Below are positions 897-36,211 of a DNA stretch of 64,000 nucleotides, in pieces. A program made the position numbers and the translations under genes. Location of the stretch: the NCBI RefSeq assembly GCF_033153115.1, contig NW_026889753.1:4402001-4466000 (forward strand), read 5' to 3'. Under the pieces are notes generated by a model that was not told where the DNA came from, did not search any database, and was given only the letters and a program-made list of their open reading frames with translations. Position 1 is the first letter of the stretch; each line of letters opens with the position of its first letter. Origin of the DNA: Saccostrea echinata (taxonomy: Eukaryota).

Positions 897-1373
897 CTGT
901 TAAAATAAAGCTAAAGAAATGTCATCAATGAAATGAATTCGATATATTTATTTCCTTGTATCTAATACGTAAAAGCATATATTCAAAGTTGTCAATTTCA
1001 TCCACTTAATACAAAACGAAAGTAGAAAACTATGTTGACGAATGTTGCGTTCTTGTTCAAGTATCAACAAATAAAAATGAAATGTTTTAATTTACCTTGA
1101 TGTAGTAATTAACGACCTAATTAGCTAGTTCCTAGCTAGCCGGTGGCTACCGAAAAGTTCTTGTGAGTAGTCAGGGATTTTCATAATATAAATAAGTAAG
1201 TAAATAAGCTATTTAAACCTCGTTGATCCTCAATTACGATACTTTTATCAATTAAAAGGAAATCCCCAATGTCAAACCGAAAGTCAGTAGTACTGTATTC
1301 ATGATATTCATGATATTTATAAATTTATAACTTGCCAAAATCTTCTAATAATTTTCATTTATGTCGTGAACAG
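897..1373. promoter_or_regulatory. Compact bidirectional promoter region with putative 5'UTR introns for both TRIM-like genes
   Basis: Minus strand: donor AG|GTAAA at 1095 and acceptor ttttaacAG at 897, 20 nt before the ATG. Plus strand: donor GTGAGT at 1163 (or GTAAGT at 1196) and acceptor cAG at 1373, just before ATG 1378. Confidence 0.4.
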
Positions 1374-1377
1374 GACA

Positions 1378-2871
1378 ATGGAGATATCGATAGACGATGC
1401 TCGAAAATGTTCTATTTGTCTGGACAGTTTTAGATGTCCAAAGATGCTGCCATGTAAACACACATTTTGTAAGCGGTGCATCTCAGGTTACCAAAGAAAG
1501 TATAAGTCAGATGACGAATTCCAGTGCCCACTTTGTAGAACCGTATTGGTGTTACCGGAAAACGGTGTTGCGGGATTCTGGGATAATTATTTTATCCGGG
1601 ACATATTCCCTGAACGTGTCTGTGAAGTCTGCAATGCAGAGGAAGATGACGTAGATGATTGTGACTATTGTGACAAGTATCTATGCTCCTTCTGTGCACC
1701 TGAACATGTATGCAAAAGACCACGAAAAGAAATTAAGAGACAAAGGGAGGACCCATCATTCCGTTCTTACTTGGATTCTAATTCTGACTGGGATTCTTCC
1801 AGTGTTTCTGAGAGTAATTCTTTATCTAGTGATAGTAACGATGAACCAATTCCCTTTGAATTGCGTAAACATGGACCAACAACTATCGTGAAGACTGTTT
1901 CCATGGAGATTTGTATCCAGATATCTGAAGAAGAATGTATATCCTCTATATTTCAAGTATCAGAAGACGTATCGGCATTTCTAACATTTGGCGGTTTTAT
2001 TTGTCGCTTTTTTGACACGCGTGATGGTTTAACCTTGAGTGAAATTTCGATTGTTGATGGGGCTACAGATGTTTGTGGTTCAGGGGATGGCACAATTTTT
2101 TCATTACTTCGAAATTGTTCCTTGGTTATGAAAACGACGGGTAATGGTGCCGATGTGTCCGTGATTTCTATTAAGGATTGCGATCCTCTGAAAATGTGTT
2201 CAATTCAGCAGGATCGAATTCTTGTTTTGGGGATGGGAAACCGATCAACTATTGTTGGGCAAATTTTAGACAATGGAGGCAAAGAACTCGACAAGTTTAA
2301 CTTAAATGTGGAATTCTATCCTCACTCTCTTGCTGTTAACGATAGCTGTTCTGTTATGTGTATACTGTACGCAGAAATAAATTTTGTAGATATCAGGGGC
2401 ATGGATGGACATTTAATCAAGAGATATTCTGGATGCACTTTAGAGCAAATTGAAGAAGAATTCAAGCCACTTTCAGTTACATCTTTCGCAGATGACAGTT
2501 TTCTTGTGTTGAACGGGTCGACTAAATCTTTACACATTATTTCACCAACAGGTGATTTCATGGGACTGGTCATTTGTGAAAACTGTGATAAACCGTGCAG
2601 TATTTATCGAGACAATGCCAATAAGATATGGATAGGGGACAGTGAAGATGGTACCCTGAAAGCCTTTGCCGTGGATACTTACTGTAATGTGTTTCCTGGC
2701 CCGGAAAATAATATAGAAAGATTGAAACTAAGAAAAGATAGGTATCAGAGGCCATCTTACTTACATCGAACCCCCTCTTTATTACGCTTTAGGCGTCGAC
2801 ACGAACCATTCCTGGGATTTTCTCGGAGATCAGGAGATTCGTCTGAGGGAGAGGAATTTCCTTTTATATAA
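1378..2871 (+). CDS. TRIM-like E3 ubiquitin ligase (RING + B-box + Ser/Asp linker + NHL-like beta-propeller), single coding exon
   Basis: ~497-aa ORF from the first ATG at 1378 (the track start at 1366 is GTG). RING CSIC..CKHTFCKRC..CPLC; B-box CEVC..CDYCDKYLCSFC..H; NHL-like repeats (FYPHSLAVN, FKPLSVT, KPCSIYRDNANKIWIGD); AATAAA near 3090. Confidence 0.85.
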   Translation: MEISIDDARKCSICLDSFRCPKMLPCKHTFCKRCISGYQRKYKSDDEFQCPLCRTVLVLPENGVAGFWDNYFIRDIFPERVCEVCNAEEDDVDDCDYCDKYLCSFCAPEHVCKRPRKEIKRQREDPSFRSYLDSNSDWDSSSVSESNSLSSDSNDEPIPFELRKHGPTTIVKTVSMEICIQISEEECISSIFQVSEDVSAFLTFGGFICRFFDTRDGLTLSEISIVDGATDVCGSGDGTIFSLLRNCSLVMKTTGNGADVSVISIKDCDPLKMCSIQQDRILVLGMGNRSTIVGQILDNGGKELDKFNLNVEFYPHSLAVNDSCSVMCILYAEINFVDIRGMDGHLIKRYSGCTLEQIEEEFKPLSVTSFADDSFLVLNGSTKSLHIISPTGDFMGLVICENCDKPCSIYRDNANKIWIGDSEDGTLKAFAVDTYCNVFPGPENNIERLKLRKDRYQRPSYLHRTPSLLRFRRRHEPFLGFSRRSGDSSEGEEFPFI

Positions 2872-3554
2872 GATTGTCTTACTAGTATATGACATTCTTT
2901 TCTCTTTCGTAAAACTCTTGGAAGTCATTTATAGCGTTTGTGTGTAAAGACATGAACCAAAATTTGAAGTGTTAAATTGCGCCATTATTTCATCTTCTTA
3001 ACAGTATAGTTTTTTAAGTACAAGTATTCCTAGACTGCATTTATGTACGTTCTCTGACAGATGCATATTGTACGTAATTGCTTAAAAGCAATAAAATACA
3101 TTATAACATACTAAGAACTCGAGAGCTTCTCGGAATTCAGAGCTGGCATTCAACATAATTACCCGGTATAATGTTTTACAATGTAGAAATAATTTCTGAA
3201 ATAACATACATGGTAACATACTTTATTGCTAAGTAAAAATGATTTTATTACACAATAGATATCATGACTTTATATAGCTAATAAATACTGTTCACATCGT
3301 TTTATGCCATCTCTCGTAGTATAATCTTGGAAAGTTCTTTTTTTTCGAACAGCAAGTACCATTGACGGAAACCATGGATTTTGCGTCCATCCTGTTTGGA
3401 CACAAAATTCCGTGGCTTGCGCCGATGAGTAGGTAGAAGAAGCATCTCTTTGGGTATATCATCAATAGTTGTGTCGCCACCAGGAATTGTAACAAGCAGC
3501 AAAAGAAAGAGGAATCGAAAACGTACACAAAAAATAATGTTTACTGAATAGAAA

Positions 3555-4226
3555 TGTGGTAGTATACGATGCACGGCATCCTACTAGCTTGGACTAGTGG
3601 GTTAACCCTTTAGCTCAATTGGTATAGCACTGGACTGGCAAGCTAGATCCCCGGGTTCAATCCCAAGCGAAGGTACTTATATGTCTCTGTTACATTTGGC
3701 GCCCACGTTGAAAACCGGATATTCTCTGGCGGGTGAAAGTGATTGCCCACAGAACTTCGCCCCACAGGCGTCGGCACTCCAAAAGAGATGAGGACATCTC
3801 TTTCTCTGGAGGGGGATAATGTGGTAGTGTAAGATGCACGGTATCCTACTAGCTTGGGCTAGTGGGTTAACCCTTTAGCTCAATTGGTATAGCACTGGAC
3901 TGGCAAGCTAGATCCCCGGGTTCAATCCCAAGCGAAGGTACTTATATGTCCCTGTTACATTTGGCGCCCACGTTGAAAACCGGATATTCTCTGGCGGGTG
4001 AAAGTGATTGCCCACAGAACTTCGCCCCACAGGCGTCGGCACTCCAAAAGAGATGAGGACATCTCTTTCTCTGGAGGGGGATAATGTGGTAGTGTAAGAT
4101 GCACGGTATCCTACTAGCTTGGGCTAGTGGGTTAACCCTTTAGTCAATTGGTACAGCACTGGACTGGCAAGCCAGAGGCCCCGGGTTCATTGCCAAGCGG
4201 AGGCACTTATATGTGTCTCTGTTACA
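3555..4226 (+). mobile_element. Tandem non-autonomous LTR retrotransposon in miniature with tRNA-derived LTRs (Helenus/TRIMp3-type): LTR-int-LTR-int-LTR
   Basis: LTRs at 3555-3694, 3820-3959 and 4085-4226, all TGT..ACA. Identical 125-bp internal domains at 3695-3819 and 3960-4084 start with PBS TGGCGCCCA and end in PPT GGAGGGGGA. 4-bp TSD GAAA at 3551-3554 and 4227-4230. No ORF. Confidence 0.93.
3604..3674 (+). promoter_or_regulatory. tRNA-derived Pol III internal promoter inside the LTR (repeated at ~3869-3939 and, degenerate, at ~4134-4204)
   Basis: A box TAGCTCAATTGG at 3611-3622; anticodon-like arm CTGGA-CTGGCAA-GCTAG; B box GGTTCAATCC at 3654-3663 at tRNA spacing. Acceptor and T stems pair poorly, so this is not a functional tRNA. 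Confidence 0.8.
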
Positions 4227-5771
4227 GAAATAGGTACACTACCATAAATAACCGTGTCCTATTTCATATTTTTAAATAAATATCAGTAAACGACTCAGTA
4301 GTACAACTCCCAAAGCTCAAGCTGGCACGACCTTATACCCTGTGTTACATTCCAAAAAAAAGATAATAGGTGCCTTGCATTATGATTTTAGTGTTGGGGT
4401 TTCCATCTAGCTTGATCTGCGTTAAGTTCTTTATGTCCAGTTGGTAAAGCGTCAATTCACATCTTATTCAACAAAAAGGTTTTTTTTTCAGTTTACGTGA
4501 TGTTTTTTATTGATTTTATTTTTAATGTCAGTTTCAAAATAAATCACCATACTTAATTGAATACATCATATTTGACAGGCTTTCATATGCAGGTAAGAAT
4601 ATGCCGATTTTTCACTCATGTAAAACCATTTACTTGCTTCTTGGTTAAGATTTAGAAATAAAAAAATGATGTGACAGCAACATTTATTTCATTCATCATT
4701 ATTTAATTGAATTTAAAGAAGAAGAAAAACGCAAAGAAAAAAAGCGACAAAACGATTTTTTTTTAGTAATAAAGATATTTAATCAACTAGTGTCAATATC
4801 CTTTGAGGAAAATGGGTTCGGCTCTTCTTTGTGTGTTGTTCCAAGTGCATGTAATATTATTTCATCCGGGGTAACTTCATTCAAATGGAGTTCATTGTTT
4901 TAAGGAGAACAAACTATTTTTCTTTCAATCAAATTTTCCTCCTTGAACGTTTAAACTTGTTGATTTCCTTCATTTTTCTATTGCTTATATGAAAATGGCT
5001 GCATACCACTCCGTATCAATGCGCCACCACCCAACTGAAATTTTTCAGTTTAAATTACTGAAAATAGTAGCTACATTCAAAACTGACACATTAATACATT
5101 ACAGTTTAAGTATTTAAATCCTCTGATATAATTATAACAGAATTATACGCTTCCCGTTTGAATGGTTCTTATGGATATTTTCTTTTCATTGAAAATGTGA
5201 TATTTTTATAATATGTACAAAGTGTAATAGTTGCTGCACACATAATAACCCAGTTCAAGTCATGTCTTTATTTTCATACCATGTGAGATGAAACAGGAAA
5301 TGATAATTTTAACTAGGAACTAACAATGTAGAAGTGTTCCATTCTATTATAACTTACTAAACGAAATAATAAAGTTTTTTGTGGTCTCAGTGTCACTGTC
5401 AATCTACATAGAGATAAAATGAATATAGTCTAATCGAATTAAACACGAAATTTAAAGTACATTTTATATTTTTTCCAAGTAGCACCTGTGAAAAAGTTGA
5501 TGATCAATTACATATAAAATACCTAGATTCATTATATAATTATGTAAATTAAACCAAATCAATAAAAAAACAAACAAACAAAAATGTTTTTGAATTCTTT
5601 ATTTTGTTATTTGTCCCCATGGCTTAAAATATTAATCTTTGCATTTCCTTTTTCTCAGTCTGTAATTCGAGTGGTTTTAAACCAGCATGAAGTAGGATAG
5701 TATCACAGTAATATGCATATGATTTTAAATAAATAATACATGTAAACAAAACCAGGTTTGATTTGATTCGG

Positions 5772-35269: not shown

Positions 35270-36211
35270 ATGGAGTTCCGAGCAGAAAGCTTGGTAACGG
35301 TGTTCTTTACAGCTCTTATTGTCTGCTTCAATACCCTCACTCTTCTGGTCATTGTGTGGACAGAATCCATTCGGAACATCAACAAAATCTACTTTGCCTC
35401 TCTGACAGTGTCAGACCTTTGTGTTGGGGTGTTTATCACACCATTTGCAGTTTTCAGCTCTTTCAGCAACTCATGGATTGTCAATGATGAAAAATTCTGC
35501 CACATCGAGGCCTACCTTCTGGTAATTTTCTTCATTGCAGGTTTGTATTCCTTAGCATGGATCAACGTGGACCATTATCTTGCCATCAGAAAACCACAAC
35601 GACACAAAGTTGCCATGACAACTGCCCGTTCCCTGTGCTGGATCATATTTGTATGGATTGGGGCTGTCAGTTTCTGCAGTCCCACATTGTTCTCTTTCAA
35701 GAAACAAGCAAAGTATTATGAAGAGGTTTTTCTGTGTTCCATAAATGCTGGTTCTCATAAGCCATACTTTGTAACCGCTGGTATACTGGTCATCTTGCCT
35801 GCTTTCTTTGCATTGGTGTCCACCAATGCGTACCTCTTTACAAAGTCATTCCGTAAAAAGAGACACATGTATCAAACCATTCTGATAGATACAGCCTCAC
35901 GACCAAATAACTATTTCATGAACTTCATAATTTCCATGATTTTTCTGATTGCATGGATTCCATGGCTAGTACTACAGATATATGGTGAATGTATAGAAAA
36001 TATTTCTGATTATCCGCATTCAGTGCATTTTTATTTGTTGTGGTTTGGAATTGGAAATTCCTTTTACAAATTTTTTGTGTATTTGGTTTGGAGTCGTGAT
36101 TTTCGACGTGGTCTACGAAAACTCTGTTGTCATAATGATTGTCGGTGTCCAGAATGCTCAATGCCCCAAAGTGCAAGTTTAAACTTTGTTACAGTGACTG
36201 CAGGAAAATAA
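35270..36211 (+). CDS. Orphan class A (rhodopsin-like) GPCR, GPR21/GPR52-like, single coding exon nested in DPP7 intron 2
   Basis: 313 aa from ATG 35270 with seven hydrophobic segments: TM1 Asn, LTVSDL, TM3 Cys, DHY, TM4 Trp, AWIP, TM7 WFGIGNSFYKFFVY, helix 8 FRRGLRKLCC. Splice acceptor tttacAG at 35227. Confidence 0.9.
   Translation: MEFRAESLVTVFFTALIVCFNTLTLLVIVWTESIRNINKIYFASLTVSDLCVGVFITPFAVFSSFSNSWIVNDEKFCHIEAYLLVIFFIAGLYSLAWINVDHYLAIRKPQRHKVAMTTARSLCWIIFVWIGAVSFCSPTLFSFKKQAKYYEEVFLCSINAGSHKPYFVTAGILVILPAFFALVSTNAYLFTKSFRKKRHMYQTILIDTASRPNNYFMNFIISMIFLIAWIPWLVLQIYGECIENISDYPHSVHFYLLWFGIGNSFYKFFVYLVWSRDFRRGLRKLCCHNDCRCPECSMPQSASLNFVTVTAGK

What the first reader, a model, noticed from the sequence alone, without database searches (positions are those of the whole stretch)
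3555..4226. Miniature LTR retrotransposon whose LTRs are built around a tRNA-derived Pol III promoter
Seen: three ~140-bp TG..CA LTRs and two 125-bp non-coding internal domains; PBS TGGCGCCCA-CGT two bases after the LTR; PPT GGAGGGGGA before the next LTR; 4-bp TSD GAAA. About half of each LTR is a tRNA-like module with A box, anticodon arm and B box. Known: this PBS is complementary to the tRNA-Lys(CTT) 3' end, 4-bp TSDs are common for animal Ty3/gypsy integrases, and Cassandra elements carry 5S-derived LTRs. From memory, tRNA-LTR miniature elements with 4-bp TSDs in animals have been described as Helenus (TRIMp3), so the class is probably not new, though this family may be. Inference: a SINE-like promoter on an LTR chassis, transcribed by Pol III and mobilised in trans by a gypsy element. 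The module resembles tRNA-Thr (AGCACTGG..CCAG) although the loop now reads GGC.
Basis: partly seen in the sequence, partly recalled or inferred. Interest (0 to 1): 0.88.

Follow-up and report, generated by a model that had tools for sequence, protein, structure and literature searches.

The report
Old Helenus tRNA-LTR miniature retrotransposon copy

Summary
There are three TG..CA LTRs (140, 140 and 142 bp) and two identical 125-bp internal domains. A tRNA-Lys-type PBS sits two bases after the LTR, a GGAGGGGGA PPT precedes the next LTR, and the flanking 4-bp TSD is GAAA.

The kind is known. It is Helenus (TRIMp3; Kojima 2024, PMC10886601). It belongs to the oyster lineage Helenus-3_SaGl / Helenus-1_CGi / Helenus-2_CVi, and younger copies have the same 141/125/407-bp dimensions as Helenus-3_SaGl.

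The own genome holds about 220 LTR motifs and 70 internal motifs. Fifteen of 27 full copies have perfect 4-bp TSDs, of 13 different sequences. Median LTR-LTR divergence is 1.4%, against 7.9% in the window copy.

Young copies score 39.9 bits on Rfam tRNA, with no acceptor stem. The window copy scores 19.5.

New here:
- The middle LTR is a mosaic: its 5' part matches the 3' LTR and its 3' part matches the 5' LTR. The array is therefore a late duplication of one old insertion.
- Several loci join Helenus LTRs to the internal regions of conventional Ty3/gypsy elements, exactly at the shared PBS or PPT.
- No autonomous element with Helenus LTRs was found.

Pol III transcription remains untested, because no usable RNA data were available. 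Interest is low to moderate.

The parts
3551..3554 (+). Left copy of the 4-bp target site duplication, GAAA
   Evidence: the same GAAA lies directly after LTR3.
3555..3694 (+). LTR1, the original 5' LTR: 140 bp, TGTGG..TGTTACA
   Evidence: It differs from LTR3 by 11 substitutions plus indels.
3583..3609 (+). Two small palindromes upstream of the A box: CTAGC-N4-GCTAG and GGGTTAACCC
   Evidence: I5, I6. By eye they are also present in the published oyster and nemertean Helenus LTRs. Their function is unknown.
3605..3675 (+). tRNA-like module of LTR1. A box TAGCTCAATTGG at 3611-3622, B box GGTTCAATCCC at 3654-3664
   Evidence: Rfam tRNA 19.5 bits. Younger family members score 39.9 bits.
3695..3819 (+). 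Internal domain 1, non-coding. TT spacer, PBS at 3697-3708, PPT at 3808-3816
   Evidence: The PBS form TGGCGCCCA-CGT is listed under tRNA-Lys-CTT in Fig. S2C of PMC10886601.
3820..3959 (+). LTR2, a mosaic. Positions 1-39 match LTR3 and positions 60-140 match LTR1. The switch lies in 3859-3878
   Evidence: 4 sites are shared with LTR3 only, then 11 sites with LTR1 only, plus 1 private change.
3870..3940 (+). tRNA-like module of LTR2. A box 3876-3887, B box 3919-3929
3960..4084 (+). Internal domain 2, identical to domain 1. PBS at 3962-3973, PPT at 4073-4081
   Evidence: 125 of 125 positions identical.
4085..4226 (+). LTR3, the original 3' LTR, 142 bp. The A box has lost one base (4141-4151) and the B box has two substitutions (4184-4194)
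   Evidence: There is no Rfam match at E <= 1.
4227..4230 (+). Right copy of the 4-bp target site duplication, GAAA

Best explanation
Window 3555-4226 is one old insertion of a Helenus-type TRIM, a non-coding miniature LTR retrotransposon. It belongs to the oyster lineage published as Helenus-3_SaGl / Helenus-1_CGi / Helenus-2_CVi.

Shown:
- It inserted once, making the 4-bp GAAA duplication.
- Its two LTRs then diverged by about 8%.
- Much later the LTR-plus-internal unit was duplicated. The middle LTR carries the 5' part of the 3' LTR and the 3' part of the 5' LTR.
- The family is dispersed and was recently active elsewhere in the genome.
- It has solo LTRs.
- It uses a tRNA-Lys-type PBS and a PPT.

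Inferred:
- Copies are made by reverse transcription and integration in trans by Ty3/gypsy elements that use the same tRNA-Lys primer and make 4-bp TSDs.
- Two conventional gypsy families with their own long LTRs are found physically joined to Helenus at the PBS, which makes them candidate helpers.

Inferred, about 0.55: the template RNA is started by RNA polymerase III from the A and B boxes of the tRNA-like module, a few bases upstream of LTR position 51 (about window 3595-3605). In this family it reads through the element, which has no T4 run on the sense strand.

The window copy itself is probably dead. Its tRNA-like module has decayed, most of all in LTR3.
For: - Anatomy.
- Dispersed copies: at least 40 full copies, 147 LTR/PBS junctions against 0 for the control, 219 LTR motifs against 70 internal motifs.
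- TSDs: 15 of 27 are perfect 4-mers, 13 different sequences, and several others match at 3 of 4 bases.
- Age: median LTR-LTR divergence is 1.4%, with zero differences in four copies, against 7.9% in the window copy. Other copies are 95-98.8% like the family majority; the window copy is 90.9%.
- tRNA origin: Rfam 39.9 bits in young copies.
- Comparison with a second Helenus family in the same genome: A box/D arm 17 of 20, B box/T arm 19 of 23, 3' terminus 8 of 8. The anticodon arm is 6 of 15, the upstream region 11 of 48, the tail 3 of 22.
- Published match: same motifs, same PBS form and same 141/125/407-bp, 4-bp-TSD dimensions as Helenus-3_SaGl.
- Gypsy link: L042 and L043 carry gypsy PR-RT-RNaseH-IN or gag between Helenus LTRs, with junctions at the PBS and outer 4-bp TSDs.
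- T runs: T4+ occurs on the sense strand in 2 of 27 copies and on the antisense strand in 25 of 27.
Against: - There is no RNA evidence of any kind. The only public run found holds other copies as contigs of uncertain type.
- Lack of T4 runs is not significant on its own: 38% of shuffles also lack them.
- The second Helenus family in this genome has a T5-T6 run right after its tRNA-like module, inside the LTR, and a T4 in its internal domain. That would stop most Pol III transcripts before the PBS.
- The gypsy-Helenus chimeras can also arise by integrase-independent annealing of cDNA ends to any resident PBS or PPT (PMC11042837). That would not show trans-mobilisation.
- Identity to the published consensus was counted by eye, not computed.
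Confidence: 0.85

Rival explanations
1. The element is a Helenus TRIM, but its template RNA is made by Pol II or by read-through from neighbouring genes. On this view the tRNA-like module is a relic of an old SINE or tRNA insertion, or serves another purpose such as RNA structure or chromatin. It is not the working promoter.
For: - Family 2 in the same genome has a canonical T5-T6 stop directly after its tRNA-like module inside the LTR, and a T4 in its internal domain.
- No RNA data support Pol III here.
- Kojima 2024 also states that the promoter is not validated.
Against: - Conservation between families is concentrated on the A and B boxes and the integrase termini.
- The region upstream of the module is under 50 nt, with no TATA box in the young copies.
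- The family in the window lacks sense-strand T4 runs.
- Cassandra, the 5S analogue, is reported to be transcribed from its Pol III promoter (as cited in PMC10886601).
Confidence: 0.3
2. The three-LTR array arose from a cDNA of this very copy, not from unequal crossover between its two LTRs. The cDNA rejoined its own locus by annealing at PBS/PPT homology, the integrase-independent pathway of PMC11042837. In that case the mosaic LTR2 is a regenerated LTR: U3 from the 3' LTR, R-U5 from the 5' LTR. The switch interval 3859-3878 (LTR positions 40-59) would then mark the transcription start.
For: - The mosaic has exactly the polarity that reverse transcription predicts.
- The switch interval contains the expected Pol III start region, just upstream of and at the tRNA-like +1 (LTR position 51).
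- Other loci show tandem-like joins at the PBS or PPT: L016, L020, L042, L043.
- Li et al. 2022 found that most such insertions form tandems at resident copies.
Against: - Unequal crossover gives the same polarity.
- The 21-nt interval is also the longest tract of identity between LTR1 and LTR3, where crossover is most likely.
- This copy's promoter boxes are decayed.
- There is only one array to judge from.
Confidence: 0.3
3. The 141-bp tRNA-like LTR really belongs to an autonomous gypsy element, and the 407-bp form is only its internal-deletion derivative.
For: L042 is a 7198-bp unit with PR-RT-RNaseH-IN between two Helenus LTRs that differ at 2 sites, and it has a TSD of ATAA. L043 has gag between Helenus LTRs.
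Against: - Both gypsy parts have their own LTRs: about 1055 bp (gypsy-A) and about 520 bp with a TATA box and AATAAA (gypsy-B).
- Canonical copies of both, flanked by those LTRs, exist elsewhere.
- L042 lacks gag and has an inverted 5' gypsy LTR.
- No second copy of either composite was seen.
Confidence: 0.03
4. It is a short 265-bp satellite, or a cluster of tRNA genes or pseudogenes, and not a transposon.
For: The period is 265 bp with 2.5 units, and there is a tRNA-like match.
Against: - TG..CA ends, a PBS, a PPT and a TSD are all present.
- Dispersed two-LTR copies have independent TSDs.
- There is no acceptor stem and no ARAGORN call in the window or in 11 loci.
Confidence: 0.01

Closest known systems
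Helenus-3_SaGl (Saccostrea glomerata), with Helenus-1_CGi and Helenus-2_CVi; Kojima 2024, PMC10886601
   Same: - Young copies have the same layout and sizes as Helenus-3_SaGl: LTR 141, internal 125, total 407, TSD 4.
- Same LTR ends, TGTGGTAG..CTCTGTTACA.
- Same upstream palindromes and the same tRNA-like module.
- Same PBS with a one-base gap against tRNA-Lys-CTT, and the same PPT GGAGGGGGA.
- By eye, this genome's family differs from the Helenus-3_SaGl consensus at roughly 8 of 141 LTR positions and 4 of 125 internal positions. The window copy differs at roughly 13%.
   Different: The family majority differs by a few percent from the published S. glomerata consensus, so it is probably a sister species' version. 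The window copy is an old, decayed, tandemised member.
Cassandra (plant TRIM with 5S rRNA-derived LTRs)
   Same: It is a non-coding TRIM whose LTRs contain a small-RNA gene-derived internal Pol III promoter. It forms tandem arrays (PMC7215508, listed).
   Different: Its module is 5S-derived, not tRNA-derived. It is found in plants, has 5-bp TSDs, and shares no sequence with this element.
biv-TRIM (Satovic et al. 2019, PMC6934838)
   Same: It is a TRIM of bivalves with solo repeats and tandem arrays of the form TDRx_I(x-1).
   Different: Its terminal repeats are 202-218 bp. No canonical PBS was identified and no tRNA-like module is described, and the authors did not detect it in Ostrea edulis. 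It is a different family.
tRNA-derived SINEs (SINE2)
   Same: They have a tRNA-like head with A and B boxes, are short and non-coding, and are mobilised in trans.
   Different: SINEs have no LTRs, PBS or PPT, and are copied by LINE target-primed reverse transcription. This element has all the LTR-retrotransposon parts.
Tandem elements made by integrase-independent insertion (Tf1/Tf2; Li et al. 2022, PMC11042837)
   Same: The joins lie at PBS/PPT homology and give LTR-internal-LTR-internal-LTR arrays at resident copies. This is the architecture of L043, L042, L016, L020 and possibly of the window array.
   Different: It was shown experimentally only in fission yeast, with a bias also seen for HIV-1. 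Here it is only a structural resemblance.

Membership tests
Helenus (TRIM with tRNA-derived LTRs; Kojima 2024) | TRIM architecture: two short LTRs around a short non-coding internal part | tested here: met
   LTRs are 140-142 bp and the internal part is 125 bp. Family copies are 404-409 bp.
Helenus (TRIM with tRNA-derived LTRs; Kojima 2024) | A tRNA-like sequence with A box (TRGCY..YGG) and B box (GGTTC) inside the LTR | tested here: met
   Rfam tRNA scores 39.9 bits in young copies and 19.5 bits in the window copy. A box TAGCTCAATTGG, B box GGTTCAATCCC.
Helenus (TRIM with tRNA-derived LTRs; Kojima 2024) | PBS next to the 5' LTR and PPT next to the 3' LTR | tested here: met
   TGGCGCCCACGT lies two bases after the LTR, and GGAGGGGGA lies before the next LTR. 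The same PBS form is listed under tRNA-Lys-CTT in Fig. S2C.
Helenus (TRIM with tRNA-derived LTRs; Kojima 2024) | 4-bp TSD in animal members | tested here: met
   GAAA in the window. Fifteen of 27 copies have perfect 4-bp TSDs, of 13 different sequences.
Helenus (TRIM with tRNA-derived LTRs; Kojima 2024) | Sequence homology to a named family (Helenus-3_SaGl lineage) | tested here: met
   15-mer motifs from the window occur in the DataS1 consensus sequences of Helenus-3_SaGl and Helenus-1_CGi. The full published sequences read alike by eye.
TRIMp3 (TRIM with a working Pol III promoter) | Transcription of the element by RNA polymerase III | not testable with these tools
   The only run found is contigs of uncertain type holding other copies. 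The author of the class also calls this unvalidated for Helenus.
Functional tRNA gene | Complete cloverleaf with an acceptor stem and a consistent anticodon | tested here: not met
   The Rfam match covers only model positions 8-63. ARAGORN finds no gene in the window or in 11 loci.
Cassandra | 5S rRNA-derived module in the LTR | tested here: not met
   At E <= 1 the only Rfam match is tRNA.
biv-TRIM | Terminal repeats of 202-218 bp, no canonical PBS, conserved TGATCCCAAAGGAC in the inner domain | tested here: not met
   The LTR is 140 bp, a clear PBS is present, and the motif is absent from the 125-bp internal domain.

The most novel reading that the evidence does not exclude
In this genome Helenus LTRs are repeatedly found joined to the internal regions of conventional Ty3/gypsy elements that have their own Pol II-type LTRs. 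The joins lie exactly at the shared tRNA-Lys PBS or at the PPT (L042, L043, L016, L020), and the composites L042 and L043 carry outer 4-bp TSDs.

If these are template-switch products made inside one particle, they would be the first direct sequence evidence of which gypsy families package and copy Helenus RNA.

If the window's mosaic middle LTR is likewise a regenerated LTR (U3 from the 3' LTR, R-U5 from the 5' LTR), its switch interval maps the transcription start to LTR positions 40-59. That is just where a Pol III type-2 promoter would start.
Probability: 0.3. Interest if true: 0.5.

Novelty: new member of a known kind. Interest (0 to 1): 0.3.

Why it matters
For annotation it matters in a small way. 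These elements look like tRNA pseudogenes and like 265-bp tandem repeats, and they should instead be masked as Helenus TRIMs.

For transposon biology the class is already published. Two questions stay open: whether Pol III really makes the template RNA, and which autonomous elements move Helenus. The chimeric loci and the mosaic LTR found here offer sequence-level handles on both, but they do not settle either.

Tried and rejected
- RNA evidence. The look-up of sequencing runs gave one run of uncertain type with 7% of the words. Laying it showed only contigs of other, 85-93% similar Helenus copies and nothing on the unique flanks. It gives no information on expression, starts or strand.
- An autonomous element with Helenus LTRs. 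L042 looked like one but was rejected. Its gypsy part has its own 1055-bp LTRs, one of them inverted, and lacks gag. Canonical copies elsewhere carry those LTRs. L043 is likewise gypsy-B sequence with its own LTR.
- A shared 47-nt leader between gypsy-A and Helenus. This was rejected, because the canonical C9 copy of gypsy-A matches only through the PBS (query positions 1-72).
- Absence of sense-strand T4 runs as evidence for Pol III. It is not significant: shuffle P = 0.38.
- Within-family conservation of the A and B boxes. It is uninformative, because the copies are 95-99% alike, so a cross-family comparison was used instead.
- Fetching more genome DNA.
Identities to them are counted by eye.
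- A column majority of the non-coding TRIM copies was computed in scratch only to measure divergence. It is not reproduced here. No consensus of any gypsy element was made.

Full report
**1. What is in the window**

- LTR1 is 3555-3694 (140 bp).
- Internal domain 1 is 3695-3819 (125 bp).
- LTR2 is 3820-3959 (140 bp).
- Internal domain 2 is 3960-4084 (125 bp).
- LTR3 is 4085-4226 (142 bp).

Each LTR starts TGTGG and ends TGTTACA. The internal domain starts TT, then TGGCGCCCACGT, and ends GGAGGGGGA plus TAA. GAAA flanks the whole on both sides (3551-3554 and 4227-4230).

LTR positions 51-121 match the Rfam tRNA model over its whole length, but only at 19.5 bits, below the gathering score of 29. 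ARAGORN calls nothing.
- The A box is TAGCTCAATTGG (3611-3622 and 3876-3887).
- The B box is GGTTCAATCCC (3654-3664 and 3919-3929).
- In LTR3 the A box has lost a base and the B box has two substitutions.

**2. It is a transposon family, not a local repeat**

- The 265-bp unit finds at least 40 dispersed LTR-internal-LTR copies on many contigs of the 923-Mb own genome.
- The 19-nt LTR/PBS junction occurs 147 times (up to 1 mismatch), against 0 for the reversed control.
- An LTR motif occurs 219 times and an internal motif 70 times, with both controls at 0. This ratio of about 3:1 means solo LTRs exist.
- Of 27 full copies, 15 have perfect 4-bp TSDs, of 13 different sequences, and several more match at 3 of 4 bases.
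- The two LTRs of a copy differ by a median 1.4%, and by zero in four copies. Most copies are 95-98.8% like the family majority. The family was therefore active recently.
- The window copy is among the oldest: 7.9% LTR1-LTR3 substitutions plus indels, and 90.9% to the majority.

**3. The tRNA-like module**

In young copies it scores 39.9 bits (E = 1.6e-5) on Rfam tRNA over model positions 8-63. That covers the D, anticodon and T arms but no acceptor stem. ARAGORN finds no tRNA in 11 loci. It is tRNA-derived but cannot be a tRNA.

The anticodon loop reads CTGGCAA.

A second Helenus family was found by accident in the same genome. Its LTR is 117 bp and its internal part about 92 bp. It has a full cloverleaf with a GGT loop and a T5-T6 run right after the module.

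Aligning the two families gives the following identities:

| Region | Identical positions |
|---|---|
| A box / D arm | 17 of 20 |
| B box / T arm | 19 of 23 |
| 3' terminus | 8 of 8 |
| Anticodon arm | 6 of 15 |
| Upstream region | 11 of 48 |
| Tail | 3 of 22 |

The promoter boxes and the integrase ends are thus what is kept between families.

**4. It is a published kind**

Kojima 2024 (PMC10886601) defines Helenus as TRIMs with tRNA-like LTRs, a PBS and a PPT, and 4-bp TSDs in animals. The paper reports 51 families in pteriomorph bivalves and proposes the name TRIMp3.

Motifs from the window occur in that paper's DataS1 in Helenus-1_CGi, Helenus-2_CVi and Helenus-3_SaGl. Read side by side, the LTR and internal sequences are plainly the same family. 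Helenus-3_SaGl has the same sizes as the young copies here: 141, 125, 407, TSD 4. The PBS with a one-base gap is listed for exactly these families under tRNA-Lys-CTT.

By eye, this genome's family differs from the Helenus-3_SaGl consensus at about 8 LTR positions and 4 internal positions.

biv-TRIM (PMC6934838) is a different element, with repeats of 202-218 bp and no clear PBS.

**5. The three-LTR form is secondary**

LTR2 agrees with LTR3 at the four informative sites in positions 1-39. It agrees with LTR1 at all eleven informative sites in positions 60-140, and it has one private change. The two internal domains are identical.

So one old two-LTR insertion was duplicated late, with a switch in 3859-3878. 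Unequal crossover between the 3' LTR and the 5' LTR gives this pattern, and the switch interval is the longest identical tract between them.

The same polarity is also what reverse transcription produces: U3 from the 3' LTR, and R-U5 from the 5' LTR. Integrase-independent annealing of cDNA ends at PBS/PPT homology is known to build tandems at resident copies (PMC11042837). In that case the switch interval would mark the RNA start, at LTR positions 40-59, which contains the expected Pol III start. One array cannot decide between the two.

**6. Search for the autonomous partner**

Among 20 further junction loci, L042 holds a 7198-bp unit with an open 1118-aa PR-RT-RNaseH-IN stretch. It lies between two Helenus LTRs that differ at 2 sites, and its TSD is ATAA.

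It is not an autonomous Helenus, for these reasons:
- The inner part has 1055-bp repeats of its own, here inverted.
- These repeats are the LTRs of a conventional gypsy family, gypsy-A. That family has a canonical copy on C9 and many solo LTRs.
- gag is missing.
- The gypsy-A LTR ends CCTGTTACA and is followed by AATT and the same gapped PBS. Similarity to Helenus in the canonical copy stops after the PBS.

L043 reads, in order: Helenus LTR, PBS, the gypsy-B leader, gag and part of pol, the gypsy-B LTR, PBS, the Helenus internal domain, Helenus LTR. Its TSD is ATTT.

gypsy-B has an AT-rich LTR of about 520 bp with a TATA box and AATAAA. By my recollection its 18-nt PBS is a perfect complement of the tRNA-Lys 3' end; this was not computed. 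It has an open gag and an open pol of at least 937 aa in L052.

L016 and L020 show further foreign internal regions joined to Helenus LTRs at the PBS and at the PPT.

These composites fit either of two routes:
- one extra minus-strand template switch at the PBS between co-packaged RNAs, or
- annealing of cDNA ends to a resident PBS.

Only the first would prove trans-mobilisation. Either way the result agrees with Kojima's expectation that the helper does not share its LTRs with Helenus.

**7. How it most likely works**

Shown: the element has the structure of an LTR retroelement, it was integrated with 4-bp TSDs, it amplified recently, it forms solo LTRs and it forms tandems.

Inferred:
- tRNA-Lys priming.
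- Copying and integration by Ty3/gypsy proteins.
- Pol III initiation from the A and B boxes.

The family in the window has no T4 run on the sense strand in 25 of 27 copies, while 25 of 27 have one on the antisense strand. However, 38% of shuffles also lack T4.

Family 2 carries a T5-T6 run inside the LTR. A Pol III template in that family would need read-through of its own terminator. This is a real difficulty for the TRIMp3 model, and I rate the Pol III step at about 0.55.

No RNA evidence could be obtained.

**8. Verdict**

The kind is already published, and this is a further member, probably in a host not listed by name in the paper. The window copy is old and decayed.

The mosaic LTR and the PBS/PPT chimeras are modest new observations that deserve a genome-wide follow-up. 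Interest 0.3.

**Limits**
- Comparison with the published consensus sequences was by motif search and by eye.

Noticed in passing
L033, L034, L038, L039, L044, L046, L048, L049, L050 (for example L038:311-640): A second Helenus family in the same genome. Its LTR is 117 bp, almost all of it a full tRNA cloverleaf (Rfam 30-48 bits, model 1-71, loop GGT), and its internal part is about 92 bp. It has the same CTGTTACA end and a tRNA-Lys PBS. A T5-T6 run sits directly after the tRNA-like module, inside the LTR.
   Followed up: partly
L042:13-7210 (- strand; G000:C15:14217512-14224709): A 7198-bp composite: Helenus LTR, 16 nt of PBS, an inverted gypsy-A LTR with PBS and Helenus internal positions 20-47, gypsy-A pol without gag, a direct gypsy-A LTR, Helenus internal positions 95-125, Helenus LTR. 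The TSD is ATAA.
   Followed up: partly
L043:328-5129 (G000:C28:5473227-5478028): A 4802-bp composite: Helenus LTR, PBS, gypsy-B leader, gag, partial pol, 5'-truncated gypsy-B LTR, PBS, full Helenus internal domain, Helenus LTR. The TSD is ATTT. Both junctions lie within the PBS.
   Followed up: partly
L016:1905-3265 and L020:1300-1500: A complete Helenus copy is followed (L016) or preceded (L020) by the internal region of another, unidentified element. The join is exactly at a tRNA-Lys PBS in L016 and at the GGAGGGGGACAA PPT in L020. A further Helenus internal motif lies 2.5 kb downstream of L016, at C14:3127719.
   Followed up: partly
L044:~165-520 and L040:~420-740: Head-to-head structures. 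In L044 an LTR, an 18-nt tRNA-Lys PBS and an inverted LTR follow one another. In L040 an inverted 30-nt LTR end replaces the 5' LTR of a copy that still has a TATA TSD. They look like integrated aberrant (snap-back) reverse transcripts.
   Followed up: no
L032:333-970: An element whose 5' LTR is family 1 up to the B box and then family 2, with a family-2 internal part and 3' LTR. The flanks do not match as a TSD, which suggests recombination between the two families.
   Followed up: no
window 3583-3609 (and the same place in LTR2 and LTR3): Two small palindromes lie just upstream of the A box: CTAGC-N4-GCTAG and GGGTTAACCC. By eye, the published nemertean Helenus-1_LiLo has CTAGC-CCAG-GCTAG and GGGAAATTCCC at the same place. 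The stems are kept while the inner letters differ, which hints at a conserved hairpin or dimerisation-type signal.
   Followed up: no
G000:C56:9857886, 10038692, 10124057, 10209426, 10311896: The Helenus internal motif, with the same single mismatch, recurs five times at 85-181-kb spacings, three of them near 85 kb. This suggests a large tandem segmental duplication on that contig.
   Followed up: no
G000:C36:5580816-5581835 and G000:C5:3510565-3511584: The same 1-kb piece of gypsy-B gag (query 643-1651, 96%) occurs at two loci with identical ends. The C36 one ends about 25 bp before a Helenus LTR. It may be a propagating Helenus-gag composite.
   Followed up: no
window 1366-2871 (+) and 35267-36211 (+): There is a 501-aa single-exon RING-finger (C3HC4) open frame ending 684 bp upstream of the element. 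There is also a 314-aa rhodopsin-family 7TM receptor open frame (Pfam).
   Followed up: partly
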